DNA from: Saccostrea cucullata
Taxonomy: Eukaryota
DNA: 64,000 bases
Reading direction: 5' to 3'
Assembly (NCBI RefSeq): GCF_032062105.1
Contig: NW_026923439.1
Coordinates: 62,001-126,000 of the forward strand
Shown: in pieces, positions 1 to 50,814 of the stretch
How positions within the stretch are numbered: the first letter of the stretch is position 1
Layout: each line of letters begins with the position of its first letter
Notes under the pieces: model-generated
What the model was told of the DNA's origin: nothing
Databases searched by the model: none
The model's input: the letters and a program-made list of their open reading frames with translations, nothing else
Made by a program: the position numbers and the translations under genes

Positions 1-26506
<26,506 letters not shown>

Positions 26507-30806: not shown

Positions 30807-32639
30807 CTGATGCACTTTCATTATAAAAATGCACCATAAGGTTTGCAACAGGCCTACTTTCTTACATCTTGTGCTACACATTTACATACATGTATTTGTA
30901 ACCATTACACTTCAAAAGCTGAATATTCAGAATTATCTGGAAGAGATGTCCATTGTTCTGAAATCACTAAAAAAATATCTTTGTTTTCTGTTATCACAGA
31001 TCTATTGTCTCAGTTGCTCGACTATATTTTATTAAAATATAAAGGAGGAGCATAATATTTTTCTTGCATTAATATATTATCTTGCATGTAGGAGGCAGAA
31101 ATATGCCACCATATATAAGCTATTTTAAAGATGAATAATACAATCTTTGTGAGATATGTAATTGTGAAAATTAAAATACATGTATTACCAGTATGTAAGA
31201 AGAAGGTACAGTTTTTAGCTTTATTGAGCCCTAAAAATGTTATGTCATCAAAAAGTTTTGAAACTGGCTTAAATATTAGTTAAGTTTATGACTGTGACAA
31301 ATCAGGAAAGAGTATGGCATGAGAGTTTACCATTCTGCATATATGACGTCATTAAATGTAATGCATTTCTCTGTTTTAAACAGAAAAAGCCTTAAAATAG
31401 CCCATTTCAAGGGTAATTTTCCTTTAGAAAATAGTGTCCATGCACAGTTAATTTTTTAGTATATGTTGTGCAAAAGTCAATAAAATATCACATATCTCAA
31501 AATCTTAGTGGGCGATGCCTGTGTACAATATTAACTGAAAGAAAATTCCATTGAAAATTGGTGTCTTCTGCAACTTTTTAAGAAAATACGGGAAAATGCA
31601 CATGTTTATGATGTCACAATCAGCATTTTACAACACTGTGAGGAAAATGAATTGTATGATTTTTCTGCATTGAATTTCAACTATTCAGGAAGCAAGAGTG
31701 TTCAACTTTTACACCAGTTTTATTTTTTATAAAATTACAGGGCAGAATTTGTATGGAAACCATTAGCCCCTTCACGGTAACTGCAGTGTACACTTTTGCA
31801 GGGCAAAATAATAACGTTTGGCGAAATTTTTGTTGACAGATAATTAAATGACGTATCTTTAACAATTACTTTTACGTCATATTTCATCAAACTATATCAT
31901 TTTGCCCTGCAAAAGAGAGTACCACAGTTACGATCTATACCTTGTTCTTCAAAAGAGGAGAATCAGCTGTGCTTTTTTTTTTCTTTAAATAACTGGTACC
32001 AGTAAATGGTACTATTCCCATAAAAAGCACTTTTGAACTGTAAAGCACCATTTTTTACTTTTTTAAAATTGGCATGTGCACCGAAGTGGCAGTGTCATCA
32101 GTGAATGATGGTGGCCGCAGTGTGGAAGAAGTAAAAGTAGAAGGTTAATTTTTCCCAGTTTTTTGACTAAAAATTCCCAATCAACTGCATGTTATTGACA
32201 GTGAAGTCTTTCTAACGTGTTACATTTTTGACAACTTAAAAGGGACTTTTATATTTCAAAAGAGACATATAAAATTATGTCTCTGATATTTTAAACAACA
32301 TTTTGAAATTCCGTCTTTAACTGCTTTCCCCTTAGGCCTATCACTGATGACATACTTTTGTATTGATGTTTTCAGCAAAGGTTTAAAAAATTCATTCCAT
32401 TTCAATTGTTAAGAGTTCTATTAAATTACTAGTAGCACTCATGACTGCACTTAGTGTTGAAGCTACTTCAGTCATGCTCTTATTACACCACCTATGCACC
32501 TCCCCCTTTTCGATTTTCTTTGCTTCGTAATTCTAAACTGTTTATTGGATAAAGTGCTAGGTTTTGTGTAAAGCTAGTCAAGATAAACACATGTACTGTA
32601 CCGAAGATTCTTTTTCACAAATTCTGGTGAAAAAAACTT

Positions 32640-32882
32640 AATTTCTTACATCTTTTCCCTGCACGTTGACAGACGATCACTTTCTTCAAACCGGAAGTGT
32701 GTTTGTTGTAGTTTTCAGCAGAGAAGATTTTGTTATTATTTTTTCAAGCTGAGTTAAGTACAGTGGAAAATAATAATTTTTTGCGTATTTGACACTGAAG
32801 TAAATAAATCGATTCTTCTTTTCTTTTTTTTAATGTATTTTTTTAAATAAAAATAATATCCCCGGTACTGACAAGATGGCGG
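32640..32882. promoter_or_regulatory. Left half of the presumed PLEKHH/THADA bidirectional promoter
   Basis: ETS motif CCGGAAGT at 32691-32698; YY1-type CAAGATGGCGG at 32872-32882 cut by the TIR element; candidate minus-strand donor (plus cttac) at 32645-32649. Confidence 0.5.
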
Positions 32883-33417
32883 TGTAACCGTGAAAACTGT
32901 CGCTAGTGCTCAGTGTCGCTCTTAATAGAATATATAGGGGAAAGAGCGACACTGAGCACTGGCTTCTGCGCATGCCTAGGGATTTCGGTCGCTTCAAATC
33001 GAAGCGGTGTCCCACTGAATTTAATTCCATGGTAATAGTATCCAAAGTCGTAGATTTTTATGTTTTCTTTGTTTATTTTAATCTTAAAAGAAGGCAAGAC
33101 AAATAAAATTTTAAAATTTTAGAACTTTTCATATTTTTTTTTTACCTCGTATAGAATTATTAAACGATCTTTTAAATTTCTATATTATAGAGAATAAACG
33201 GCTACACATTTAATCGCGGTAAATTGAACAGATACTTGTATTTAAAAAAAAAAGAAAAAACATGCCACAGTCCCTCAGTCATTTCTTAATAGGTGTGAAC
33301 CGCGCCGTGGGCGTTATCTCAGACAGGTGTCAAAAATTACCTGTTTGTTAATAACTAACAAACATAGCTCCCCATGGTCGATTGATAATTTGATACCAAT
33401 TAAAGGTGTGAACGGAG

Positions 33418-36400
33418 GTTTCAGTTTCAGTTTCTTTATTTCTTTAAGCCAACTGGCCCATCAGAGTTATACAACAAACATGATAATAACAAAAAGAAAA
33501 AACATACAGAGAGAGTGAACGTAAAGAACACATACATGGGAATAATTCTATACATCAATTTTATTTTTTTCTTAACATTGTTGCTTCGTTCAAAAATTTG
33601 CCCAAATTTACGAGATCTTTAATATTGTGAGAACTTAACAGCTGAATTAATTTAAAGACACTAGGCCTAGTATAATAATACTTTTTCAAAAATTTCTTTC
33701 TTATATCAATATACAATGGACATTTCAAAATAAAATGAAATTCATCTTCTATATCATGGAGATTACAACATGTACATAATCTGTTATTTTTAGGTACGTT
33801 ATGGTGTCGACCTGTTTCAATATTCAACGTGTGATTGGATAACCTGAATTTTGTTAATAGCTGTCTTAATTTTTTGTCAATAGGTTTTGTTAAATACCAT
33901 TGCAAACAGAAATTGTCAAATAAATGTTGATATAAATTACACTTTGAAGAGTTTGATATATTTTCTAATATAGCTTGCCTGGAAACATCTAACAGTCGTT
34001 GTTTTATAATGAGATAAGATCTATCATTTAAATTATCTTCTGTCCAAAGTTGACCTAGACCTAAGAGGGACAATTCTTTTTTAATTTGTAAAATCCATTT
34101 GTCATTATGTAATACCATGCTTTCATAACAGGACTTAAGAATGCAATTTTCAGTTGTTCTCAGTTTGATCCAATATTTGAAAATTCTTAATTTCATTGTA
34201 ACTGCTAATGGAAAACGCCCGAGCTCTGAATAAATCAAACTGTTTGAGGTTTTCTTCCCCACACCTAGAGTATTTTTACAGAAATTTAAATGTACCTTTT
34301 CTACGTCAGAACATCTATGAAAACCCCATATCTCAGTTCCATAAAGTAACACGCTACATACATATGTATCAAAAATTGAACATAGAGTTTCTACATTAAA
34401 TTCATACCTCTTTAATTTACTTGAAATAGCAAACATAGCTTTTCTTCCTTGTTCAGCAGCATGCTTCTGCGTTTTTAAAAATTTCCCATTAAAGTTAAAT
34501 AACATACCTAGATATTTAAATTCATTCACAATTTCTAATTCAGCATTATTATAGAACCAGGATTCGTTATTGCGTAATTTACCACCATTTCTAAAGACAA
34601 CAATCTTTGTTTTTGTTACATTAACAGAAAGGCTCCATTCTTCAGTATAATTGTACAGTGTGTTTAACATTTTTTGTAAGCCTTCTGGAGATTCAGCAAA
34701 AATAACCATGTCGTCTGCATACATAAGTATGAATAAATTTAACATCTGTAAATCAATATATGGACAGTTATCTGATATAAAACCAACCTCGAAATCATTT
34801 ACATATAATGAAAATAATATTGGTGATAATGTTTCCCCTTGCATTAAACCTATATCATTGTGGAAGTAATCACTGAGGAAACCATTGTATTTAACACAAC
34901 TTTTAACATTATTGTATAAGGATTTGATTATCTTTAACATTTTACCTTGGATGCCTAAATGAAATAATTTTTGCCATAATTTTATCCTATCAACAGAATC
35001 GAATGCTTTTCGAAAGTCAACAAAACAGCAATATAATCTTTTCTTTATAGAAAGGTACTTATTTATAAGCGATTGCAGAACAAAAATAGCATCAGTTGTT
35101 GACATTCCTTTACGAAACCCAAATTGTGCATCCGTCAATATATCATAGGAGTGCTCCCATTCCAGTATCCTATTGTTTAGAACACTTGTAAATAATTTAC
35201 CAAAACAGCTTACAATAGATATACCACGATAATTGTTAACATCATTCTTATCTCCTTTTTTAAACAATGGAGTAATATATGAAACATTTTGACCATGATT
35301 CAGGGTAAAAACCAGAGTTAAAAATATTATTAAAGAGTTTATGTAGCAGCGGGAGCAATTCGTCGCGGCATTTCATAAACAGTTCGTTAACAATACAATC
35401 TTCTCCACAACTTTTATTTGTTTTTAACTTTTTAATTGCTGTGCATATTTCTTCGTAACTAATCTCTGTATCCAACTCGTCGTATACAGCATCCGAATAG
35501 AATTCTTTTTTCAAGTTGTCGCCCGTGTTAGAACCGAGATTTTTAAAATGAGTGAAGAAATCTTCTAAATTTAAATTACAATCAACATGCTTTGTCTTTT
35601 TCGTTTTAAAAAGTTTAAAGAATTGTTTTGGGTTCTGTTTCTTCAAAAAAGTAAGCATATCGCCCTCATGGCGTTTGTACTGTCGTTTAAGTTTATTTTC
35701 AAATTTTTTGTAAGTTTGTTTAGCGTTTGAAAGAACCTCTCTATTTTCTGATGCTTTATTTACATTAAACACATTTAGTTTTTGTTTGTACTCATTATAA
35801 AGATGTTTACACTTATCGTTAAACCATGGTTTATCCTCATATTCTTTAAATATTTTTATTGTATTAATGCCTTGCTGTGGGTTAGATTCACGAACATCAC
35901 AGAAAGGGAGTACGCAAGTATTTAATAATTCACAGAAGCTATCAACACAAGAATTAACATTCTCGATAGAAGTAAACTCTACATCTACAATACTTTGAAG
36001 CTCGTGTATTTTATTGTTCAAACAATCTTTAACAAGGCAAGAATTTTCGTCCTTCCACTTAACTGACCTCGCATTCACTCTACCGTGACAATTGTTTACT
36101 ACGTGTTCGTTATTCTGAATGGTCGAATATCTCAATGAAACACTAAAGGAAACAGGTGAATGGTCAGAAAAAACTGTAAAATTACCTGATTTGAACTTAC
36201 TTATACTGGATAATTGAGTACTTTCAACCAATACGTAATCTATCAAACTAAAACCTCTTTTACTATAAAAAGTCAAATTACCTACTTCATCACCATTTAT
36301 TCTGCCATTAACTATTCGAAAGCCAGTAGATTTACAAAAATCTAAAAGTTTTCTACCCAAACCATTTACACATTTATCCATATTATTACGCTTTATCGGA

Positions 36401-37210
36401 ACATTATCTTCGACGTAATTATCTTTTAAAAAATCTGAATAAGAGCCGTCTCGTAGAAGTTTATCGTGTTTGATATAGTCATCTTGCTCCGCTGTTCTAG
36501 CATTAAAGTCTCCAAAAATATATACCTGACCTTCATTTTTAAATTCACTATACAATTCCTCTAGTAATTGAAAAAAATTAACATCAACCTTTTCATAAAA
36601 AGAACTATTTTCGGAAGGAATGTAACAAAAAAATAAAAATATTGGGGTTTCACATTCGACTTTTAAGCAAATTACACTATCAAACAAGTTTTTAACTAAT
36701 TTTATCCTTGAACATAAAAAACTTCTATAAAAAATTACAATTCCTCCACCTTTTATTTTTCTGGGAACAATGAAATGTTCGTAACCTACCAAATGAAATT
36801 CATCGTCTGGATTAATCCAGCATTCACAAAGACAGATAACGTCGTAACTAGTAATGAATGAAACAAATTCAAAATGAGACAGTTTTTCGGATAGAGATCT
36901 TGCTATATTCCAAGATAGTACTGAAATTTCACTGCGGTCACTCTCAACGCGTCCCTAAGCGTTGCCACTTGCAGTTGGGTCAGGTGGTTGCTCGTCAGTT
37001 CTGAATTCCATCTCCTCTGGGTGCTTCTCAGACTCGTCTGGGATATAAGGCTTGCCGTCTACAATAAGTTTGTCTCTAACGAGTTTCACGCGCTTACCTT
37101 CGGCACGAAGACGGTGCATAACCGGAAGTAGATGTCTCCTTCGCTCGCTCATATCAGCTGGTAATTGCTCCTGGATGCCGTAGGGCTTGTTTTTGAACCG
37201 AGAACTGAAA
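33418..37210 (-). mobile_element. 5'-truncated non-LTR retrotransposon (APE-RT; RTEX/Daphne-like) with an ORF1 C-terminal remnant
   Basis: ORF1 tail 36955-~37200 (ERRRHLLPVM...VKLVRDKLIVDG). ORF2 has an endonuclease (SWNI, VICLCECW, GDFNART, SLIDY, SDHSP), RT (FVDFRKAFDSV, GLMQGETLSP, YADD) and a C-terminal CxxC...EDEFHFILKC. The 3' end has AATAAA plus a (GAAACT)n tail at ~33418-33440. Confidence 0.9.
33561..36954 (-). pseudogene. LINE ORF2 (endonuclease/reverse transcriptase) broken by one frameshift at ~35276-35281
   Basis: ORFs 35260..36792 and 33561..35267 overlap at SKCFI/TPLFKKGD within an (AT)n run. The frame is open upstream to the ORF1 stop at 36955-36957. Confidence 0.85.
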
Positions 37211-37321
37211 TCTAGTAACGAACCTTAAATATCTGTAATTTATCAAAATATAAGTTGAAAATGTATATAAGTTCTATCAACCAGTTTTTATTTAACAGAT
37301 AAATAACGAGAAACACGCATA

Positions 37322-40300
37322 ATTATGAAGAATGAGTATCAGTGAAAAGTGTGGCTCTTCAAAATGGCAGTTTCCTATTTTCTCACACCTGACTTATATA
37401 TCGTCTGTAAAACAGGTATACAGTAAAATTTCAAGCCGGTTTCAGTTGATATAGATGATTTAAGTATAATTTAATAATTCTAGAAGATAAAATTGTCGAA
37501 AATAATTATTTTGAAATAGTTATGAGCATCAGTGCTGAGTGTCGCTCTCCAAAATGGCAGTTTCCTATTTTCTCACACCTGACTTATATATCGTCTGTAA
37601 AACAGGTATACAGTAAAACTTCAAGCCGGTTTCAGTTGATATAGATGATTTAAGTATAATTTAATAATTCTAGAAGATAAAATTGTCGAAAATAATTATT
37701 TTGAAATAGTTATGAGCATCAGTGCTGAGTGTCGCTCTTCAAAATGGCAGTTTCCTATTTTCTCACACCTGACTTATATATCGTCTGTAAAACAGGTATA
37801 CAGTAAAACTTCAAGCCGGTTTCAGTTGATATAGATGATTTAAGTATAATTTAATAATTCTAGAAGATAAAATTGTCGAAAATAATTATTTTGAAATAGT
37901 TATGAGCATCAGTGCTGAGTGTCGCTCTTCAAAATGACAGTTTCCTATTTTCTCACACCTGACTTATATATCGTCTGTAAAACAGGTATACAGTAAAATT
38001 TCAAGCCGGTTTCAGTTGATATAGATGATTTAAGTATAATTTAATAATTCTACAAGAAAACATTGTCGAAAATAATTATTTTGATATAGTTATGAGCATC
38101 AGTGCTGAGTGTCGCTCTTCAAAATGACAGTTTCCTATTTTCTCACACCTGACTTATATATCGTCTGTAAAACAGGTATACAGTAAAACTTCAAGCCGGT
38201 TTCAGTTGATATAGATGATTTAAGTATAATTTAATAATTCTAGAAGATAAAATTGTCGAAAATAATTATTTTGAAATAGTTATGAGCATCAGTGCTGAGT
38301 GTCGCTCTCCAAAATGGCAGTTTCCTATTTTCTCACACCTGACTTATATATCGTCTGTAAAACAGGTATACAGTAAAATTTCAAGCCGGTTTCAGTTGAT
38401 ATAGATGATTTAAGTATAATTTAATAATTCTAGAAGAAAAAATTGTCGAAAATAATTATTTTGAAATAGTTATGAGCATCAGTGCTGAGTGTCGCTCTTC
38501 AAAATGGCAGTTTCCTATTTTCTCACACCTGACTTATATATCGTCTGTAAAACAGGTATACAGTAAAACTTCAAGCCGGTTTCAGTTGATATAGATGATT
38601 TAAGTATAATTTAATAATTCTAGAAGATAAAATTGTCGAAAATAATTATTTTGAAATAGTTATGAGCATCAGTGCTGAGTGTCGCTCTTCAAAATGGCAG
38701 TTTCCTATTTTCTCACACCTGACTTATATATCGTCTGTAAAACAGGTATACAGTAAAACTTCAAGCCGGTTTCAGTTGATATAGATGATTTAAGTATAAT
38801 TTAATAATTCTAGAAGATAAAATTGTCGAAAATAATTATTTTGAAATAGTTATGAGCATCAGTGCTGAGTGTCGCTCTTCAAAATGGCAGTTTCCTATTT
38901 TCTCACACCTGACTTATATATCGTCTGTAAAACAGGTATACAGTAAAACTTCAAGCCGGTTTCAGTTGATATAGATGATTTAAGTATAATTTAATAATTC
39001 TAGAAGATAAAATTGTCGAAAATAATTATTTTGAAATAGTTATGAGCATCAGTGCTGAGTGTCGCTCTCCAAAATGGCAGTTTCCTATTTTCTCACACCT
39101 GACTTATATATCGTCTGTAAAACAGGTATACAGTAAAATTTCAAGCCGGTTTCAGTTGATATAGATGATTTAAGTATAATTTAATAATTCTAGAAGAAAA
39201 AATTGTCGAAAATAATTATTTTGAAATAGTTATGAGCATCAGTGCTGAGTGTCGCTCTTCAAAATGGCAGTTTCCTATTTTCTCACACCTGACTTATATA
39301 TCGTCTGTAAAACAGGTATACAGTAAAACTTCAAGCCGGTTTCAGTTGATATAGATGATTTAAGTATAATTTAATAATTCTAGAAGATAAAATTGTCGAA
39401 AATAATTATTTTGAAATAGTTATGAGCATCAGTGCTGAGTGTCGCTCTTCAAAATGGCAGTTTCCTATTTTCTCACACCTGACTTATATATCGTCTGTAA
39501 AACAGGTATACAGTAAAATTTCAAGCCGGTTTCAGTTGATATAGATGAATTAAGTATAATTTAATAATTCTAGAAGATAAAATTGTCGAAAATAATTATT
39601 TTGAAATAGTTATGAGCATCAGTGCTGAGTGTCGCTCTTCAAAATGACAGTTTCCTATTTTCTCACACCTGACTTATATATCGTCTGTAAAACAGGTATA
39701 CAGTAAAACTTCAAGCCGGTTTCAGTTGATATAGATGATTTAAGTATAATTTAATAATTCTAGAAGATAAAATTGTCGAAAATAATTATTTTGAAATAGT
39801 TATGAGCATCAGTGCTGAGTGTCGCTCTCCAAAATGGCAGTTTCCTATTTTCTCACACCTGACTTATATATCGTCTGTAAAACAGGTATACAGTAAAATT
39901 TCAAGCCGGTTTCAGTTGATATAGATGATTTAAGTATAATTTAATAATTCTAGAAGAAAAAATTGTCGAAAATAATTATTTTGAAATAGTTATGAGCATC
40001 AGTGCTGAGTGTCGCTCTTCAAAATGGCAGTTTCCTATTTTCTCACACCTGACTTATATATCGTCTGTAAAACAGGTATACAGTAAAACTTCAAGCCGGT
40101 TTCAGTTGATATAGATGATTTAAGTATAATTTAATAATTCTAGAAGATAAAATTGTCGAAAATAATTATTTTGAAATAGTTATGAGCATCAGTGCTGAGT
40201 GTCGCTCTTCAAAATGGCAGTTTCCTATTTTCTCACACCTGACTTATATATCGTCTGTAAAACAGGTATACAGTAAAATTTCAAGCCAGTCTTACTTGAT

Positions 40301-40420
40301 ATACATCGTTTAGGTATAAGTCAATAATTCTAGAGGAAAAAATCGTAGGAAATAATTATTCTGAATTAGTTATGAGCATCAGGGATAAGTGTCGCTCTTC
40401 AAAATGGCAGTTTCATATTT
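37322..40420. repeat. 190-bp tandem repeat (satellite), about 16 near-identical units
   Basis: agtgctgagtgtcgctct recurs at 37531, 37721, 37911 ... 40191 (190-bp period), with degenerate edge units at 37341 and 40381. Confidence 0.97.
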
Positions 40421-40894
40421 AGGGGAATTTCAGACTTTGCACACCGGCGTTATAATACACAAAATAATTCAGCTGATCATCTTGATAAATTACATTTCCC
40501 AAGCTTTCTTGGAAGGACAGATATATTCCTTATCAACAGATTTGAGGCCCAGTTTAGTAAATCTGCACAATTTTTTATGCAAATCTGCAAATTAGGGAAC
40601 TTGTAATTTTTCTGCACTACTTTCTTCTCCTACCGATTCTAAAAATAATTAGTGGGATGTACTAAGTACACAACATACTGGTATTGTTAGGCATGTGAAT
40701 TATTGATACTTGTATTATATAATTTAATGTCATATCATTTCATACTCGGTATTCTTCCCGTTTCATTTATTGAGTTGCATTCCTGATATATATCTTACTA
40801 TATTGATATCGGTTATTTTTATTGAATATGGTATAAATTTAATACCTTGTAAAAGGAACGGTGTATCGTCTGCAGCGTGTTGTAGGATTTTTAT

Positions 40895-43375
40895 TCTCTG
40901 ATTTGAACATATTTTATTGATTATACTTTACAAATGGGATTGGGCAAAAGTTCTAAAAACTTATTACGCCCTCTCCCTACATATGCATTGTGTCAAACAT
41001 ATTTACATACATGGGTTTCAGCTTAAAATGAAATAACAATAATAATAATATAATAATAATATATAATAATCAGAGTAAAACACATTCAGTAGAATACATT
41101 TCATATGTCATAGACATGCTGTATAAGATTTACAATTAGAAATAATTATTGTATCAACCAAATCGTCCTGACTTTTTAATAAAAGTTTGTACAATAGAAA
41201 ATAGGTATTCATTTTCAAAATCATTTAACGATTTGTCTCCCCAGAGTAAAGTGTGAGTATCGACAGTGTGTAATTTACCCATTCGCAAAAATTTGTCAAA
41301 AAATTCTTTCCTGGCTTCTGTATATTTTTTGCATGAGAAGAAATAATGATGAGTATCCTCCACTCTTCCACAAGAACATAGTGGACTCAAGATTACATTA
41401 CATCGAAAAAGATCGCTATTAAGCACACAGTTATGTCTGAGCCTCGTGTGTATTATATTTAAGCGTCGATTTCCATAACTGAAGTAAGAGGGTGGCATTT
41501 GTTTATCGAAAGAAATAGACTTTTTAAAAATAGATAACGAGGGAGAATTTCTTACATTAAGAGGTAATGAGTTCCATTCTTCAATAACAAGGGGAACGAA
41601 AGTTGATTTGTAAGCTTGCAATCTGCATTTGGGTATGTTATAGTTCTGCGAGTTTCTCGTACTGTAACTTGATGAATTACATCGTAAGTTAGGGATTATA
41701 TCTGCGAGATATTCAGGAACTTGGTTTTTATCAATTTTATACATTGTAGTTAGTCTGGTCTTTTTCCTTCTTTCATGTAATGGTTCCCATCCAGTTTCAA
41801 TGTAAAGTGCATCTTTAGAAGCTAACAGAGTTAATCCTGTGACAATTCTAGCAGCACATAATTGTAATTTTTCTAATTTTTCGCTGTCACCTATATTACA
41901 TCCACCCCACACCAAGGAAGCGTATTCTAACTGTGGTCTAATGAAGGTTGTGTACATGAGTGAAAGAGTTTTTCGGTTGACAACAAATTTAAGTTTTTTT
42001 AACAAGCCCAATTTTTTATATGCATTGGCTAGAATAGTATCAATATGTGTAGACCAACTAAGATCTTGCGAGAAAAAAATTCCTAAATGTTTATGAAAAG
42101 AAACAAATTCTAGCTGACTTTGCTGGAAGAAAAGTTTAGGATAAATAACACTTTTTTTCAGGCTAAAAAATATTGCTTTAGTTTTAGTAGGATTGAATTT
42201 AAGAAGCCATTTTTTCGACCAGATTTCTAGCTTGTTAAGATCAGAATTCAGTTTGTTTTCAATAGTATTAACATTTTTAGATGACTGTTGTAGGGAGTTA
42301 TCGTCTGCAAATAATCTACAAAAACTTGTCATTTCTTCAGCAACATCATTAACATATATAAGAAATAATAAAGGTCCTAACACTGAGCCTTGAGGGACAC
42401 CGGCGTGTATAGGTTTTTCGTCAGATAGCAAGTTTCTGTATAAAACTCTTTGTGATCTACCTTCTATGTAACTCTTTAACCAATGAAACATATTTCCCTC
42501 TATACCATAAGTTCTAAGTTTGAACAAGAGACCCTTGTGCCACACACGATCAAATGCTTTAGAAAGATCACAGAATATCATACAACAATTTTCACCATCA
42601 TCGATGGCTTTAACAATAGTATCATATGTTTCTATTAGTTGATATACAGTGGAATGACCTGGTAAAAATCCAGCCTGGTATTTATAAAAAAGATTGTTGT
42701 CACGAAAGTGATTATACAAGTATTTGAATATGATTCGTTCCATTATTTTACCAATACAACTTAACAGTGACACAGGTCTATAATTAGACATAACAGATGG
42801 ATCATCTTTTTTAAATAAAGGGAGAACATTGGCAACTTTCCATTTGCAAGGAAAAATACAATCAACTAATGACCTATTAAACAATAAACATAATGGTTTT
42901 ACAATAGTATATATGGTAGATTTCAACATCTTGTGACTAATATTATCTGGACCTATTGCTTTGTTAACAGGAATAATTGAAATAATATCTATAATCTCTT
43001 GTTCATCAATACAGACTGTATCAAATAGGTTATTGCACACAGAATATAAATTAGGTAAAATAGCGTCGTTTTCGTCAATACAAGAGATAGAAGCAAAATA
43101 ATCATTTAAAACATCTATTTTCTCTTCATTTGTAAAAGCCACACGTGCGTCACCATTAACAGAGGTATACTGTAGAGGAGGAATATCGGTAGTAGATTTT
43201 ACTTTAAATATATCTCTCAATAACTTCCAGTAAAGTTTGGAATTATTTTTACTTGCGTCTGTAATATGATGCTCTATGTTATTATGATAATTTTCAATGG
43301 CGATTTTTTTCATATTGTTAAACTTATTCCTGCATTTCTTATATTTTTCCCAGTCAGAATTTTTTATTCTCTAAG
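40895..43375 (-). mobile_element. 5'-truncated CR1-type LINE
   Basis: 719-aa ORF 41154..43313 with RT motifs (NYRPVSLLS, DLSKAFDRVWH, GVPQGSVLGPLLFLIYVND, LFADD, IRPQLEYAS). The 3' UTR ends in aataaaatatgttcaaatc (plus-strand gatttgaacatattttatt at ~40900-40918). The endonuclease is missing because of truncation. Confidence 0.9.
41154..43313 (-). CDS. CR1-like reverse transcriptase ORF (uninterrupted, N-terminally truncated)
   Basis: ORF track 719 aa with a complete RT core and a C-terminal Cys/His motif (CSCGRVEDTHHYFFSC). Confidence 0.8.
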   Translation of the reverse strand: MKKIAIENYHNNIEHHITDASKNNSKLYWKLLRDIFKVKSTTDIPPLQYTSVNGDARVAFTNEEKIDVLNDYFASISCIDENDAILPNLYSVCNNLFDTVCIDEQEIIDIISIIPVNKAIGPDNISHKMLKSTIYTIVKPLCLLFNRSLVDCIFPCKWKVANVLPLFKKDDPSVMSNYRPVSLLSCIGKIMERIIFKYLYNHFRDNNLFYKYQAGFLPGHSTVYQLIETYDTIVKAIDDGENCCMIFCDLSKAFDRVWHKGLLFKLRTYGIEGNMFHWLKSYIEGRSQRVLYRNLLSDEKPIHAGVPQGSVLGPLLFLIYVNDVAEEMTSFCRLFADDNSLQQSSKNVNTIENKLNSDLNKLEIWSKKWLLKFNPTKTKAIFFSLKKSVIYPKLFFQQSQLEFVSFHKHLGIFFSQDLSWSTHIDTILANAYKKLGLLKKLKFVVNRKTLSLMYTTFIRPQLEYASLVWGGCNIGDSEKLEKLQLCAARIVTGLTLLASKDALYIETGWEPLHERRKKTRLTTMYKIDKNQVPEYLADIIPNLRCNSSSYSTRNSQNYNIPKCRLQAYKSTFVPLVIEEWNSLPLNVRNSPSLSIFKKSISFDKQMPPSYFSYGNRRLNIIHTRLRHNCVLNSDLFRCNVILSPLCSCGRVEDTHHYFFSCKKYTEARKEFFDKFLRMGKLHTVDTHTLLWGDKSLNDFENEYLFSIVQTFIKKSGRFG

Positions 43376-43689
43376 CACGAGTTCTTTAGTAAAGCCTATT
43401 AATTCTGGCGAATTGTGAATCTTTTTCGACATTGTTTCCACTATAAATAAAAGGAGCAGTGTTGAGACTGGACACCCTTGTGTCATTTTGCATTTCTGCC
43501 CATCTGTTACACTTTCTTTCGAACTTGTGCTGACATTTTACATAGCAATTCCCTATACATGTACGGCCTGAAGATTATTTTTAGATAGATATGATGCATT
43601 CCAGTAAAATGCGTTATTTTTATTTTGAATCTGTGTTCCTCTAAAAATTGACGCTTTCCAAATATGCTGCATCTGAATCTTGCACACTA

Positions 43690-44480
43690 GTAGCATAAGA
43701 AGAAAAATGGGCTACCGGTAAAGCAGGTGTACCCCAGTCTTCAATTGCAAGAGGTTTTAATGTTACGCACAGCACCATATGTTACGCACAGCATTTATAA
43801 AATATAAAAATGCAACACCAAATTAAATGTTCGCAAAAATACGAGATACCACGTGTAATATCAGCAGCAAAGAATCACTTCAGAGAATTACTAGTACGTA
43901 AAAGTGAATGTAAACAGTGACATCATCTACAGCATGAATTATCCCTAAACTGCAAAGATCATCTAGCAATACCCTTTTCAACTGACTAAGACTTATTGCA
44001 AAAGGATTACCCATGCCAGTGTTCTGGTCCCACAGCACTCCATGCAAATATCTACTTCAAAGATCTCAGATCAATGGAGTATGACCAAAGCATCACCATT
44101 GAACATTTTGGTGTAGCTAGTCCAGAATGTTTATCAGAGAGCCTGTTATTGAAGTGCTAGGGTTTCGTAATGAACATTAGACAGAAAACTGCCTCCAGGA
44201 CGTTAAAAAAGGTGGTGGTGGTAGTTTAGTGGAATGAAAAACGGTATTACACAAGAGTAAGACTGATTTGGTTCGTATTTAAAGGTCTTTGATGGTAAAA
44301 GGTACTCTAACTATGTTCTACCTGAACACGCCTATTCAATTTTGCAATGACAACCTCATTCTTGCAAAACAACAGAAACCTGATTCTGCAATTGTCACCT
44401 CGAGAGTTAAGCCTAACTAAGCAGCATTAGACAAAAGGGATTGACATGATCCATTTGCCAAAGACAATCACATCCCTAGA
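43690..44480 (+). pseudogene. Heavily decayed Tc1-type transposase
   Basis: Fragmentary peptides: AGVPQSSIARGFNVTHSTI (N-terminal HTH, ~43722-43780), IPRVISAAKNH (~43845-43880) and NCLQDVKKGGGGSL (the GGGSVMVW motif, ~44188-44230), with many stops and frameshifts. Confidence 0.6.
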
Positions 44481-44554
44481 CCCTGCAACAGCTGACTAAA
44501 GCTCTACATTTGGAGTGGGAGAGTATTCCTATAGAGTTTTTATAACACACATTA

Positions 44555-46800
44555 CCCTTTGACTGTAGATTTCAACTTGCCTGTGAACTACCCCCTGACT
44601 GCAGACTCCATTTTGACTATAAAGAACCCCCCTGACTATGAACTTTGACCTTGACTATGAACTATCCCTTGACTGTGAACTACCCCCTGACCGTGAACTT
44701 CCCCCTGACTGTAGACTCCACCTTGACTATGAACAACCCCAAACTGGAGACGCCACCTTAACTATGAAGTATCCCCAAATGTAGACTCCACCTTGACTGT
44801 GAACTACCCCTGACTGTGAACTACCCCCCTGACTGTACAATCCAACTTGACTATAAACAACTCCAACCTGTAGACTCGATTGTGAACTATTCCTTTACTA
44901 TGAACTACCCACTGACTGTAGTTTCCACATTGACTATGAATCACCCCTTGACTGAGACTCCACCTTAATTATGAAGTATCCTCAAACTGTAGACTCCAAT
45001 TTGACTGTGAACTACCCACTGACTGTAGACTCCACCTTGATTGTGAACTACCCCTTGACTGTGAACTACCCACTGATTGTAGACTCTACCTTGACTATGA
45101 ACTAACCCTTTACTGTAGACTCCACCTTAACTATGAAGTGCAGTAAAACTCGATTAGTACGAACACGGAGATTGCGAATTCACAGATACAGCAAAGTTAT
45201 CTTGGATCCCCAGCTATATAAATTTAACGAATTCCTTATACAGATATAACGAATTACGGATATAATGAAGTTATTTCATAGGTCCCAGTGTCTTCGCTAT
45301 AACCGAGTTTAACTGTATCCCCAAACTGTAGACTCCAATTTGACTGTGAAATACCCCCTGACTACACACTCCACCTTGACTATGAACAACCCCCTGACTG
45401 TAGTCTCCACCTTCACTATGAACAACCCCATGACTGCAGACTCCACCTTGACTGTGAAATAACACCTGACTGTAGACTCCATCTTGAGTGTGAAGTTTTT
45501 ATTACACACAGTGCCCTCTGACTGTAGATTTCAACTTGACTGTGAACTACCCCCTGACTGTAAACTCCACATTAACTGTGAACAACCCCCTGACTGTAGA
45601 CTCCATCTTGACTGTGAAGTTTTTATTATATACAGTGCCCTCTGACTGTAGATTTAAACTTGACTGTGAACTACCCACTGACTGTACACTCCACCTTGAC
45701 TATGAACTACCCCTGACTGTAGACTCCACCTTGATTATGAACTTTCCCTGACTGTAGACTCCATAGACGCCACCTTGACTATGAGCTACCCCTTGAACCT
45801 TGACTGTACACTCCACCTTGACTATGAACTACCCCTGACTGTACACTCCAAACTGTAGACTTCCTTAATTGTGAACTATCCCTTGACTATGAACTACCCT
45901 TTGAACCTTTACTGTAAATTCCACCTTTATTGTGAACTACCCGCTGACTGTAGACTCCACCTTGACTATGAACTACCCCTTGAACCTTGACTGTAGACTC
46001 CACCTTGACTATGAACTACCCCATGAACCTTGACTGTAGACTCCACCTTGATTATGAACTTTCCCTGACTGTAGACTCCATAGACGCCACCTTGACTATG
46101 AGCTTCCCCTTGAACCTTGACTGTACACTATGAACTACCCCTGACTGTACACTCCAAACTGTAGACTTCCTTAATTGTGAACTATCCCTTGACTATGAAC
46201 TACCCTTTGACTATAGACTCCACCTTGACTATGAACTACCCCTGACTGTACACTCCAAACTGTAGAATTCCTTAATTGTGAACTATCCCTTGACTATGAA
46301 CTACCTTTGACTATAGACTCCACCTTGACTATGAACTACCCCTGACCATAGACTCCACCTTGACTATGAACTACCCTTTGTACCTTTACTGTAAATTCCA
46401 CCTTTATTGTGAACTACCCACTGACTGTAGACTCCACCTTGACTATGAACTACCCCTGACTGTACACTCCAAACTGTAGACTTCCTTAATTGTGAACTAT
46501 TCCTTGACTATGAACTTCCCTTTGACTATAGACTCCACCTTGACTATGAACTACCCCTTGAACCTTGACTGTAGACTCCACCTTGACTATGAACTTCCCC
46601 TGACTGTAGACACCACCTTGACTATGAACTACCCTTTGAACCTTTACTGTAAATTCCACCTTTATTGTGAACTACCCGCTGACTGTAGACTCCACCTTGA
46701 CTATGAACTACCCCTTGAACCTTGACTGTAGACTCCACCTTGACTATGAACTACCCCATGAACCTTGACTGTAGACTCCACCTTGACTATGAACTACCCT
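44555..46800. repeat. Complex minisatellite (~35-43 bp units built on tgactgtagactccaccttgactatgaactacccc)
   Basis: Dozens of imperfect copies are visible; interrupted at ~45140-45316. Confidence 0.92.
45140..45316. mobile_element. TA-type MITE (cagtaaaactcg...cgagtttaactg) inserted in the minisatellite
   Basis: Short inverted termini; it interrupts the unit motif gaagTAtcccc. A relative is present at ~55888-55982. Confidence 0.65.
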
Positions 46801-47697
46801 ATTGCAACACAAGACCTCAATGCATGCTGTTTCATCCAAAGGAGCAGTCTCCACGTCCAACAGTGGGATTTGAAACCACAACATAAGAACCAACCCCTTA
46901 CTTGGCAACTCTAGAAAATTTCTAACCACTGCACCATGCATGCGACAGCACAGCAATTTAGAAGATCCATAAACTGACTCAAAAAAACTTAAATTGTTGC
47001 CCAAAAGCAAGAAAATGGTATCACTAGGACCATCAAAATAATTGGTCTAGTATCTGTCTATTTATCATAATTATCATGAAACTATTAACAATAAAATATA
47101 CTTTACATGCATTTCATACTCTATACTATACCTCTCATACAGGCCTATCTTGGCCTTTGAAGAACATTAAAAAAGGTATTTTTTGCTCATTTTTAATCAT
47201 CTATTATTTACAAGTCTACCTATCATTAAATCAATGAAAGTTCTATTTGTGTAATAAAAAAGTGTTCTTGTGCAGTTCTCTTATTCTATAAACCTTTCAA
47301 ATACATGTATATTATTGTCCCTGCCATTGCAAAAGTGGGGGGGGGGACAATATAAATCTCATCCGTCTGTACTTCTGTCAATCTGTAGTTCTGTCCATCA
47401 CAAAAACTTTAAATTTGGTCATAATAGTAAGATTCTCAGCCAACCTTGGTCTTTCAGTCAGGTGATGTAACCTAATTAGCGTCTGAAACTTACACAGCTT
47501 TTCATTCATGGCTGAAATATAGATTTCGGCAAACATCAACAAGTTTAGAGATAATACAATGAAAGTTTGTTGTACGGCAAGTGGTGGGGCTTAGTCACAT
47601 TTGGTGATGTGCCATATACCCTGGAACTAAAAGTGAGAGCCTGCCAGGGATGATCCTGGGTTGGGGTCTTTAAACCAAGACCTTTAAGAACCTTAAT

Positions 47698-47825
47698 GTG
47701 GCAGTCAGCCCAGTTAGATCGCCAGTGACCGGATAGATCAGTTGGTTATTTGAGACCTGACCAGAGATTCAGGGGGCCACGGTTTGAATCTCAGTCTGGT
47801 CAGCATTGTTTTTCTCCTCTCCCAT
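47698..47825 (+). repeat. tRNA-derived repeat (SINE-like), decayed copy
   Basis: Similar to 58168-58295, including the upstream gtggcagtcagcc...gatcgccagtg and the B-box region. Confidence 0.55.
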
Positions 47826-50814
47826 AAAAGGAAAAGATCCGAAGGGGACATCAGATCATTAGAGTGAAATTACTCCTACTCTCAGCATAGCTCTATCATG
47901 TCTATTAACAATACTCATTTTCTTATACTTATATTGTCTTCACTTTTTTATAGAATAATGTTTAGCAAAAAGTATAATAAATGTTAGTACAGTAAGAAAA
48001 AATGTATGTTAAGAGAAATTTTATTTGATCAAGCCGTTCAATTGAATTTCAGGTTAAAATGTAATTTCTTGAATATCTTAAACAATTGTCAATCTGTCAT
48101 TAAACACTTACAACATGTGTACAAACTAATGAATTATTTGGATTTTATAGTAATTTTTAAATGGATTTCAAATTTAATTTAAAGTGTAAAAAATAGATAG
48201 GTCAATTTTTCCCCAAATTCATTTTCTCTGATACTTTGATCTTTTGCTCTAAGATACAAAATCTCTTCTTTATATGATATGAAAGAAATTCGATCACACA
48301 TTTTTGTCCACATAGTTTGAAATATGGTCTGTAAGAAAGTTGTGAAATCAGACATTCAACGTTTTTCAACATTATCAATTAATTTATTGAAAACTTGCAT
48401 GATGCTGTTTATAAAGACAATATTTTTGTTACTGGTACTTGAATTCAATAAGTTTAGTTATAATGATACTGGTAAATTTGAATATTAAGATATTATGTAA
48501 AAATAGAGCATACATATAAGTGTCAGAATTGAAAATAATTCACAAGTAACTATGCTACACATAAAGTTATCTCATGAGAAATTGTATAATTCAATTTTTA
48601 CAAAAAAAAAATCAACAGAATGATTCCAATGGGTCCCAAAATTGTGTCAGATTAAGGAAAATTGAACTGATAGTGTTAGATATTTCATCACAATATTTTA
48701 TCTTTAATACTTTTTATCTTTAACCTCTTGATATGACATTGACCTTTACGGTACATTAAACATCTCGTAATATATGTGTCCAAATATCAGCCCTCTACTA
48801 TATATGGAACATAAGTTACACTGCATTTCGTAACAGACTTACAGTCTGTACTGCATTTAAACAGCATTAAGCCATTCTAAAATGTAAGCTACCAAGTGAC
48901 CGATACATGTATATAGAATTCTCTGATTTTTTTCCCCACAAAATATGTCAATTTTTGCTTAAGTAGCGCATAAAATATCTACCAAACTAAGCGATTTTGT
49001 CGTCAAATACTGGGCAAGTTCTTTTATAGTTGTCTTACTGGTAGCTTGTCTAGCATTGTAGTGCATATGCAAGATGTTTTTTTTTTCACTTTACTATCTG
49101 GTTTCATCTCTTTGTATGATATATAATTTTATATTGTGTGTGGACTCTAGACTCAGATCATGCTGATAGATGTTTGAAGTTATAAATCTAAGTTTATCAT
49201 CACTGTAATGAAAATGAACTGTCTATCCCAACATTAACAATATTTCAGTGACATTGCATCTTACTGAACGGTGTGTCGATTTACCCAAATGGAGCCAAAG
49301 ATGACTCAAATGGACTTCTGTAGACTTTATATCAAAAATAAAATGCATCTACAGTGTATATATATATAAAAATAATTATTTATTTTTGCATTTAGATATT
49401 TATATTGTTGAATATTCAGAATAATGGCTATTGAAATAAATGTGTTTTGTGTTTATGACAAACATTCAAATTATTGTATTAAAAAAAAAAAATTATTCAT
49501 TACAATTAAGTAAATTATTTTAAAATATATGAGTTTACCAATCAGAAAATTTCACAAAGTTATATTCTTTTTTAGTAAATCAGTACGTAGCAACAGGGGG
49601 CCGGGGGCTTGCTCCACCTCTATTTTCCAGACATAACTTTTAGTTTTACTGTATTAAAAATGTTCATTGAAAGCCCCCCTCCACCACACACACTTTCAAA
49701 AAAAAGATGCTACATCACTATAAATGATATTACTATTTTATCATAATTAAGTCCCTTTGCTTAAATCGACGCAATTTACTGAATGTCACCTATCATGGAT
49801 CATCATTGAACATATACACTGTATAAATGAATCAATGTGAACAGAACTCATCTAACCAAAAACTATATGATGAAAAATGATTGAAAACTGCTCAGTTTTT
49901 AATTTATGACAGAGAATGTTAACACCTAAACATTCATAGGGAAAATCCACATTAGTCTTTGTGTACAAGAAAAAAAAAAAACTTTTCAGCATTATAGACA
50001 CATTAAAACCACAATAAATAGAGGAAATTCGCGTCGCAACTTTATACTGGTTGCAAGTGGCGAGACCATAATTTAACCTTACTTGTGTCTAACATTACAT
50101 TTATCGGCAAAACAAACGATAATTATTTTTATTTTATCTTGTTAAAATACTGTCTTACTTACAATAGATCGGTTTTGATTGCGAGTTTACTAATCATAAT
50201 ATTGTTCTCTCGAGTGCAAACAGCTGATTAAGTTGGATGCCGATCTCGATGTTTAAAAACATTAAACAGTTTATAGTACACTTCTGCTGTCGCTTTCTTT
50301 TCCCAAATAGTTTTTTTTTTCAGTCAATTAATAAATATCTAATTAAATTAGTCATATATTGCACTTCTTCTTATGTAATTTTAGAGATGAAGTATCACAT
50401 GAAAGCCCAGATCAGATGCCGATCGCGATGCAATAGCGTCGAATGTCAAACACTTATTTTTCAAGATTTTGCTGAAAATATTCAAAAAACCAGAATTCTT
50501 TAACAGTCTTGGAACTTTATTACTTCGATTTTACTTCATTTTAAACACTAATTGCGTCTATATAAGGCGATTACAACTTTCTCGGGGTCTAATTATACGA
50601 GTGTCGAATTGCACGGCTACCGCTTTTTTCAGAGCGACACTGAGCACTAGCGACAGTTTTCACTGGTACAGCGGCCCACATGAGTGAAAATGCTGCTGTC
50701 AGACTACATTTGCCATTTGGTGGAAAACATCGCTGAATCGGTCAACATGATACTTACCAAAAGAGAATACCACAAGCAACTTTCTTAATAAACATTTTAG
50801 GCTATTTGTTGAAA

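What the first reader, a model, noticed from the sequence alone, without database searches (positions are those of the whole stretch)
32879..50674. The 17.8-kb block between the two genes is one Ginger-like TIR transposon carrying cargo
Seen: 40-bp inverted termini (32883-32922 and 50631-50670, 38/40 identical) begin TGT and end ACA, with GCGG duplicated exactly outside both. Known: TGT...ACA TIRs with 4-bp TSDs characterise Ginger (integrase-type DDE) DNA transposons. Inference: what looks like scattered LINEs, satellite and junk is one large non-autonomous unit of 17,788 bp with no own transposase visible. It may be an undescribed giant element family mobilised in trans.
Basis: partly seen in the sequence, partly recalled or inferred. 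Interest (0 to 1): 0.9.

Follow-up and report, generated by a model that had tools for sequence, protein, structure and literature searches.

The report
Large satellite-filled Ginger1 transposon in oyster
This is one copy of a real family of about 50 large, gene-less jumping DNAs in an oyster genome; it landed in the shared promoter of two old neighbouring genes and was later enlarged by two unrelated retrotransposons, so it is an unusually big member of a known kind rather than a new kind.

Summary
The termini are confirmed: 32883-50670 (17,788 bp), 38/40 inverted repeats TGT...ACA, GCGG on both sides. The TIR has about 100 hits in the genome (control 0), forming 25 inward-facing pairs of 1.5-21.6 kb (median 12.1 kb) at different loci. 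16 of 22 checked pairs have a perfect 4-bp duplication (14 CCGG), the Ginger1 signature. The orthologous site in Saccostrea echinata and Ostrea edulis is empty, with one GCGG. Correction: the shared mobile unit is a non-coding core of about 7-12 kb (11.4 kb here). The two LINEs and a MITE (6.4 kb) occur only in this copy, so they are nested insertions, not transported cargo. The core holds a 190-bp satellite whose every unit carries the TIR motif, and a 36-bp minisatellite. The copy splits a conserved ATGGCGG (YY1-like) motif in the head-to-head PLEKHH/THADA promoter. No transposase partner was found, so Ginger1 membership rests on ends and target. New variant of a known kind.

The parts
32879..32882 (+). 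left target-site duplication GCGG (also the end of the conserved ATGGCGG promoter motif)
   Evidence: single GCGG at the empty site in S. echinata and O. edulis
32883..50670 (.). whole element copy, 17,788 bp, of which about 11.4 kb is family core
32883..32922 (+). left TIR (TGTAAC...), 38/40 to the right TIR
32943..32962 (-). extra inverted copy of the inner TIR motif, present at the left end only
32883..33419 (+). conserved left arm of the core, 93-98% identical among copies
33420..37193 (-). nested LINE 1 (endonuclease 35260-36951 and reverse transcriptase 33561-35267, in two frames), private to this copy
   Evidence: Pfam RVT_1 and Exo_endo_phos; empty junction in other copies; free copies 98-100% identical, none spans the junction
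37332..40420 (+). 190-bp satellite, 16.3 units; each unit carries the inner TIR motif with one mismatch, pointing like the left TIR
   Evidence: (best match in shuffles: 4 or more mismatches)
40900..43360 (-). nested 5'-truncated LINE 2 (ORF 41154-43313) with a 12-bp duplication (40888-40899 and 43361-43372), private to this copy
43361..44550 (.). shared non-coding spacer, probably decayed transposon debris (weak Tc1-like and LINE-like peptide traces)
   Evidence: (E 0.05 to a Tc1 protein); no Pfam hit
44553..46799 (+). 36-bp/18-bp minisatellite, variable in length among copies
45141..45315 (.). nested 175-bp MITE with CAGT...ACTG ends, private to this copy
46800..50670 (+). conserved non-coding right arm, with a SINE-like piece at 47697-47825
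50631..50670 (-). right TIR (...GGTACA)
50671..50674 (+). right target-site duplication GCGG
32600..32882 (.). conserved promoter module of the head-to-head gene pair: CCGGAAGT (ETS-like, 32691) and AAGATGGCGG (YY1-like, 32873), now 17.8 kb from the THADA start codon
   Evidence: aligned to S. echinata and O. edulis; the ATGGCGG motif also lies upstream of THADA in C. virginica; factor names from own knowledge
50815..50900 (+). first coding exon of THADA/Trm732 (ATG at 50815, 144 bp right of the element)
   Evidence: DUF2428 on later exons; orthologue alignment
26363..26506 (-). first coding exon of the PLEKHH-type gene (PH, MyTH4, FERM)
   Evidence: MyTH4 exons in the window; same gene head-to-head with THADA in O. 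edulis and S. echinata

Best explanation
It is one copy of a non-autonomous cut-and-paste DNA transposon family of Ginger1 type. An integrase-like transposase made elsewhere in the genome (inferred, not found) binds the 40-bp TIRs, excises the unit and inserts it with a 4-bp staggered cut at CCGG, less often CCGC/GCGG, which leaves the duplication (shown: same ends and same 7-12 kb interior at many loci, with duplications). The master copy was already non-coding when it spread, and held a 190-bp satellite with the TIR motif and a 36-bp minisatellite; both arrays have since grown and shrunk within each copy (shown). This copy inserted into the shared PLEKHH/THADA promoter in this lineage (shown by empty sites), and two young LINEs and a MITE then inserted into it (privacy shown; the order, after landing, is inferred). 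The TIR motifs in the satellite probably bind transposase and may help a long element to be moved (inferred).
For: 25 inward pairs; 9 of 13 fetched copies with a perfect duplication and different flanks, 16 of 22; left-end targets CCGG 20, CCGC 4, GCGG 3 of 30; collinear interiors, 0.7-5.9% pairwise divergence, two supported subfamilies; empty site in S. echinata and O. edulis; Ginger1 defined by 40-270 bp TIRs, TGTNR ends and CCGG (75%) targets (PMC2836005); no ORF over about 100 codons and no Pfam hit in the core; LINE junctions unique; satellite units more alike within a copy (95-99%) than between copies (89-94%).
Against: No transposase gene was tied to these TIRs. None of the listed OTU or Ulp1 hits lies inside a TIR pair; the rve and OTU lists were capped at 150. 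The right end starts TGTAC, not strictly TGTNR. The second-choice target is CCGC/GCGG, not CCGT/ACGG as in Hydra. Described Ginger1 elements are 2.6-7 kb. A role for the satellite in transposition is untested, and short derivatives without it (1.5-3.3 kb) exist, so it may not be required.
Confidence: 0.85

Rival explanations
1. The full 17.8 kb, LINEs included, was mobilised as one cargo-carrying unit.
For: Other copies reach 16.6-21.6 kb, and four large copies could not be read inside.
Against: No second place in the genome spans either LINE junction; free copies of both LINEs are 98-100% identical; every large copy read has its own private inserts.
Confidence: 0.08
2. The ends are moved by a different enzyme with TG...CA ends and a 4-bp stagger (Ginger2, or an integrase borrowed from a Gypsy or Polinton element), so the family is Ginger-like in look only.
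For: No partner found; Ginger2 also has TGTNR ends and 4-bp duplications; the genome has thousands of integrase candidates.
Against: Ginger2 prefers AT-rich RTATAY targets and Polintons make 6-bp duplications; there are no terminal direct repeats, so it is not an LTR derivative; among these groups CCGG specificity is reported only for Ginger1.
Confidence: 0.1
3. The two ends belong to separate short elements that happen to face each other, and the interior is host DNA.
For: Short 1.45-kb relatives exist.
Against: No partner ends lie inside the block; the interior is shared by at least 10 other loci; the empty site is clean.
Confidence: 0.01

Closest known systems
Ginger1 DNA transposons (Bao, Kapitonov, Jurka 2010, PMC2836005)
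   Same: TGT...ACA ends, TIR of about 40 bp, 4-bp duplication specific for CCGG, animal host (the group is known from the mollusc Aplysia); non-autonomous copies are mentioned for lancelet.
   Different: Described elements are 2.6-7 kb and code for a transposase; this family is non-coding, median 12 kb, filled with two tandem arrays. Second-choice target CCGC/GCGG rather than CCGT/ACGG.
Satellite-bearing foldback elements Tetris (Drosophila virilis, PMC4079207) and Rehavkus (Tribolium, PMC12581902)
   Same: TIR elements whose internal tandem repeats vary in number, homogenise locally and can grow into long arrays; extra repeats are proposed to strengthen transposase binding.
   Different: There the arrays lie in both inverted arms; here one array sits near the left end only, and the element is not a foldback.
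Helentron non-autonomous elements with central satellite arrays in Crassostrea gigas (PMC7492417, PMC8268682)
   Same: Oyster mobile elements that scatter short satellite arrays; one C. gigas satellite (CgiSat41) is annotated as similar to Ginger1.
   Different: Helentrons are rolling-circle elements without 40-bp TIRs or a CCGG duplication.
Pack-MULEs and other large non-autonomous TIR elements (PMC6431247)
   Same: Long passenger DNA between TIRs, moved in trans.
   Different: No captured host gene fragments were found here; the filling is tandem repeats and old repeat debris.

Membership tests
Ginger1 | TIRs of about 40-270 bp | tested here: met
   40-43 bp
Ginger1 | 4-bp duplication specific for CCGG (or CCGT/ACGG) | tested here: met
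   CCGG at 20 of 30 left ends, on both sides in 14 of 22 pairs; the minor class is CCGC/GCGG
Ginger1 | termini TGTNR | tested here: inconclusive
   left end TGTAA fits; right end TGTAC fits TGT but not the fifth base
Ginger1 | transposase with YPYY, H2C2, DDE, GPY/F and OTU or Ulp1 domains (in the autonomous partner) | tested here: inconclusive
   absent from the element; no listed OTU or Ulp1 hit inside a TIR pair, one rve hit 12 kb from a lone right TIR on C3891 that could not be read; lists capped
Ginger1 | transposase phylogeny within the Ginger1 clade | not testable with these tools
   no transposase sequence in hand
Ginger2/Tdd | AT-rich RTATAY target | tested here: not met
   targets are CCGG or CCGC
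Polinton, IS3EU/GingerRoot | 6-bp duplication; TA..TA ends for IS3EU | tested here: not met
   4-bp duplication, TGT...ACA ends
LTR retrotransposon derivative (LARD/TRIM) | long terminal direct repeats | tested here: not met
   only the inverted 43 bp and one 21-bp motif copy match between the ends
Foldback (Tetris/Rehavkus type) | long inverted arms built of tandem repeats at both ends | tested here: not met
   array near the left end only, single orientation
Non-autonomous TIR element (general) | dispersed copies with unrelated flanks, and an empty orthologous site | tested here: met

The most novel reading that the evidence does not exclude
A giant non-coding Ginger1 lineage that offsets its size with an internal array of transposase-binding motifs, seeds long satellite arrays (one spread over 33 kb on C2956), is steered by its CCGG target into unmethylated promoters, and here has rewired an old two-way promoter so that THADA is now started from the element's right end.
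Probability: 0.15. Interest if true: 0.65.

Novelty: new variant of a known kind. Interest (0 to 1): 0.4.

Why it matters
It extends Ginger1, a little-studied group described as 2.6-7 kb coding elements, to gene-less units of about 12 kb that spread fairly recently (0.7-6% divergence). It is a clean, dated case of a satellite that appears to live only inside a DNA transposon and carries that transposon's end motif, which makes the link between end-binding sites and satellite birth testable. This copy is also a natural 17.8-kb insertion into a promoter conserved across oysters, so its effect on THADA and PLEKHH can be measured. Repeat pipelines would split such elements into LINE, satellite and unknown pieces. 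None of this is a new mechanism.

Tried and rejected
An empty site in the same assembly: none. I sent no letters of window 50675-56500 to a database search afterwards; those letters were only compared locally with oyster orthologues and included in a whole-window tRNA scan. Autonomous partner through rve, Ulp1, OTU and relaxed TIR patterns: none identified. Hidden transposase exons in the core: no long ORF, no Pfam hit. A LINE reverse-transcriptase remnant at 43367-43537, suggested by eye, was not confirmed. tRNA and Rfam: none. A minus-strand splice donor near 50757 is not conserved in S. echinata and was dropped. A TATA-like box 112 bp inside the right end is present in only 5 of 13 copies, weak support for an outward promoter. 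Repbase could not be checked, so the family or a relative may already be deposited there.

Full report
Observation. The element runs from 32883 to 50670 (17,788 bp), its 40-bp ends match at 38 positions, and GCGG flanks both sides. The left end carries one more, inverted copy of the inner TIR motif at 32943.

It is a family. The left TIR has 90 matches within three mismatches in the 1.17-Gb assembly and the reversed control has none; a relaxed pattern gives 103, so about 50 copies. Left-type and right-type ends form 25 inward-facing pairs of 1,455 to 21,636 bp, median 12,091. I read 12 other copies. Nine of the 13, this one included, have a perfect 4-bp duplication with unrelated flanks: seven CCGG, one CCGC, one GCGG. 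A pattern test adds seven more pairs with CCGG on both sides, so 16 of 22 pairs. Thirty left ends are preceded by CCGG (20), CCGC (4), GCGG (3) or other (3), and only two pairs of them share flanks. A fixed target on both sides is weak proof that two ends belong together. The stronger proof is that the rare variants match on both sides (GCGG here, CCGC in C8922) and that the interiors are collinear.

Empty site. I therefore found the right-hand gene's orthologues. An exon at 61810-62238 matches THADA of Ostrea edulis at 77%, so the host is an oyster. In Saccostrea echinata the left and right flanks are contiguous, with a single GCGG at the exact junction, followed by CCCACATGAGTG as predicted. 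O. edulis shows the same. Neither locus has the TIR or the satellite.

What moves and what does not. After removing pieces private to one copy, the core is 7.3-12.1 kb in the eleven long copies, and 11.4 kb here. It consists of a 540-bp left arm, a 190-bp satellite, a spacer, a 36-bp minisatellite and a 3.9-kb right arm. Three pieces are private to this copy: a LINE at 33420-37193 (endonuclease and reverse transcriptase), a truncated LINE at 40900-43360 with its own 12-bp duplication, and a 175-bp MITE. The other copies show the empty junctions. No other place in the genome spans either LINE junction, while free copies of both LINEs are 98-100% identical over their 3' ends. They are young nested insertions, not cargo shown to travel. 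Other long copies carry different private inserts (MITEs, a Tc1 piece, a LINE), as expected of large neutral targets. The core has no ORF over about 100 codons outside the arrays, no Pfam hit, no tRNA and no Rfam match. It includes a SINE-like piece and weak traces of older transposons. Copies differ by 0.7-5.9% and fall into two supported groups; this copy is closest (0.7%) to a 3.3-kb deletion derivative on C3573. A 1.45-kb sister subfamily has ends 86% identical.

The satellite. Each 190-bp unit contains the inner 17 bases of the TIR with one mismatch, facing the same way as the left TIR; shuffled units never came closer than four mismatches. Unit number ranges from about 4 to 26 per copy read, and units are more alike within a copy than between copies, which indicates local homogenisation. 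A unit-specific probe has 745 genome hits, about what 50 copies would give; 99 of the 100 listed lie on contigs that carry a family end, and on C2956 they spread over 33 kb. So the satellite seems to be confined to the element and has grown long at least once. That the motif binds transposase is an inference from its place in the TIR. Derivatives without the array exist, so it may not be required.

The landing site. The left gene has MyTH4 exons and the right gene DUF2428 exons; they are the PLEKHH-type gene and THADA, head to head also in O. edulis and S. echinata. The target GCGG is the end of an ATGGCGG motif found upstream of the THADA start in all four oysters compared, with a CCGGAAGT motif further left in three. 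From my own knowledge these resemble YY1 and ETS sites. The duplication leaves the whole module on the PLEKHH side and 17.8 kb from the THADA start codon at 50815. The effect on expression is unknown. Flanks of family insertions are CpG-rich (observed/expected 0.8-0.9 against 0.29 in the gene bodies of this window), and such promoter-like motifs are more frequent within 200 bp (6 in 5.2 kb against 2 in 28.6 kb). This is a post hoc lead: it includes this locus, and CCGG sites are simply more common in CpG-rich DNA.

Comparison with what is known. Ginger1 is defined by 40-270 bp TIRs, TGTNR ends, CCGG-specific 4-bp duplications, lengths of 2.6-7 kb and a Gypsy-integrase-like transposase with OTU or Ulp1 domains; Ginger2 prefers RTATAY (PMC2836005). 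This family meets the TIR and target features, fits the end pattern on the left only, and fails the tests for Ginger2, Polinton, IS3EU, LTR derivatives and foldbacks. The transposase feature could not be settled: none of the listed OTU or Ulp1 hits lies inside a TIR pair, the rve and OTU lists were capped, and one integrase hit 12 kb from a lone right end on C3891 could not be read. So it works like a non-autonomous Ginger1 and probably is one (about 85%). Tandem arrays inside mobile elements are known from Tetris (PMC4079207), Rehavkus (PMC12581902) and oyster Helentrons (PMC8268682). Four paper searches on Ginger found no description of large non-autonomous Ginger1 elements; Repbase was not available.

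Verdict. A real, well-bounded element and an apparently undescribed family: a new variant of a known kind, notable for its size, its TIR-motif satellite and its landing site. Interest 0.4.

Noticed in passing
window 26363-26506 (-) and 50815 onward (+); L051, L052: The PLEKHH-type gene and THADA stand head to head in this oyster, O. edulis and S. echinata. From memory the two genes are also divergent neighbours in vertebrates, which would make this an old conserved gene pair; I did not test that.
   Followed up: partly
G000 C2956:25269-58783: The 190-bp unit is spread over about 33 kb, 14 kb upstream of a right TIR at 72529: possibly a satellite array growing out of one copy.
   Followed up: no
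G000 C3891:63674 and 75889-76158: A lone right TIR with CCGG lies 12 kb from an integrase-core hit in a 400-codon frame: a nested Gypsy, or a candidate partner transposase. Could not be read.
   Followed up: partly
G000 C13793:18154-19608, C17781:11902-13358 (also C895, C13720, C20220): A sister subfamily of about 1.45 kb with a variant TIR and right ends 86% identical.
   Followed up: partly
L006 and L016, left flanks: Two other left ends, which share one flank at 91%, also end in a GGTAC..GAC..AAGAT..GGCGG stretch like the promoter motif hit in this window.
   Followed up: partly
L021, left flank: The left TIR is preceded directly by 13 bases matching a right end, as if one copy sits against the stub of another.
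   Followed up: no
L003:2661-3011: A RecQ-like helicase fragment (Pfam DEAD) is nested 147 bp inside a left end, perhaps an AcademH-type insertion.
   Followed up: partly
window 37361-40401: Most satellite units also hold AAAATGGC, a YY1-like core, next to the TIR motif.
   Followed up: partly
window 20098-20773, 59947-60442, 51181-51316, 53995-54151, 31777-31931, 14209-14318: Several small inverted-repeat elements (MITE-like) in the introns of the two genes.
   Followed up: no
window 10976-11604, 5713-6358, 16055-16532: Intronic tandem arrays (45 bp, 108/146 bp, 50/100 bp) in the left gene; the 45-bp unit starts with a splice-donor-like sequence on the minus strand.
   Followed up: no
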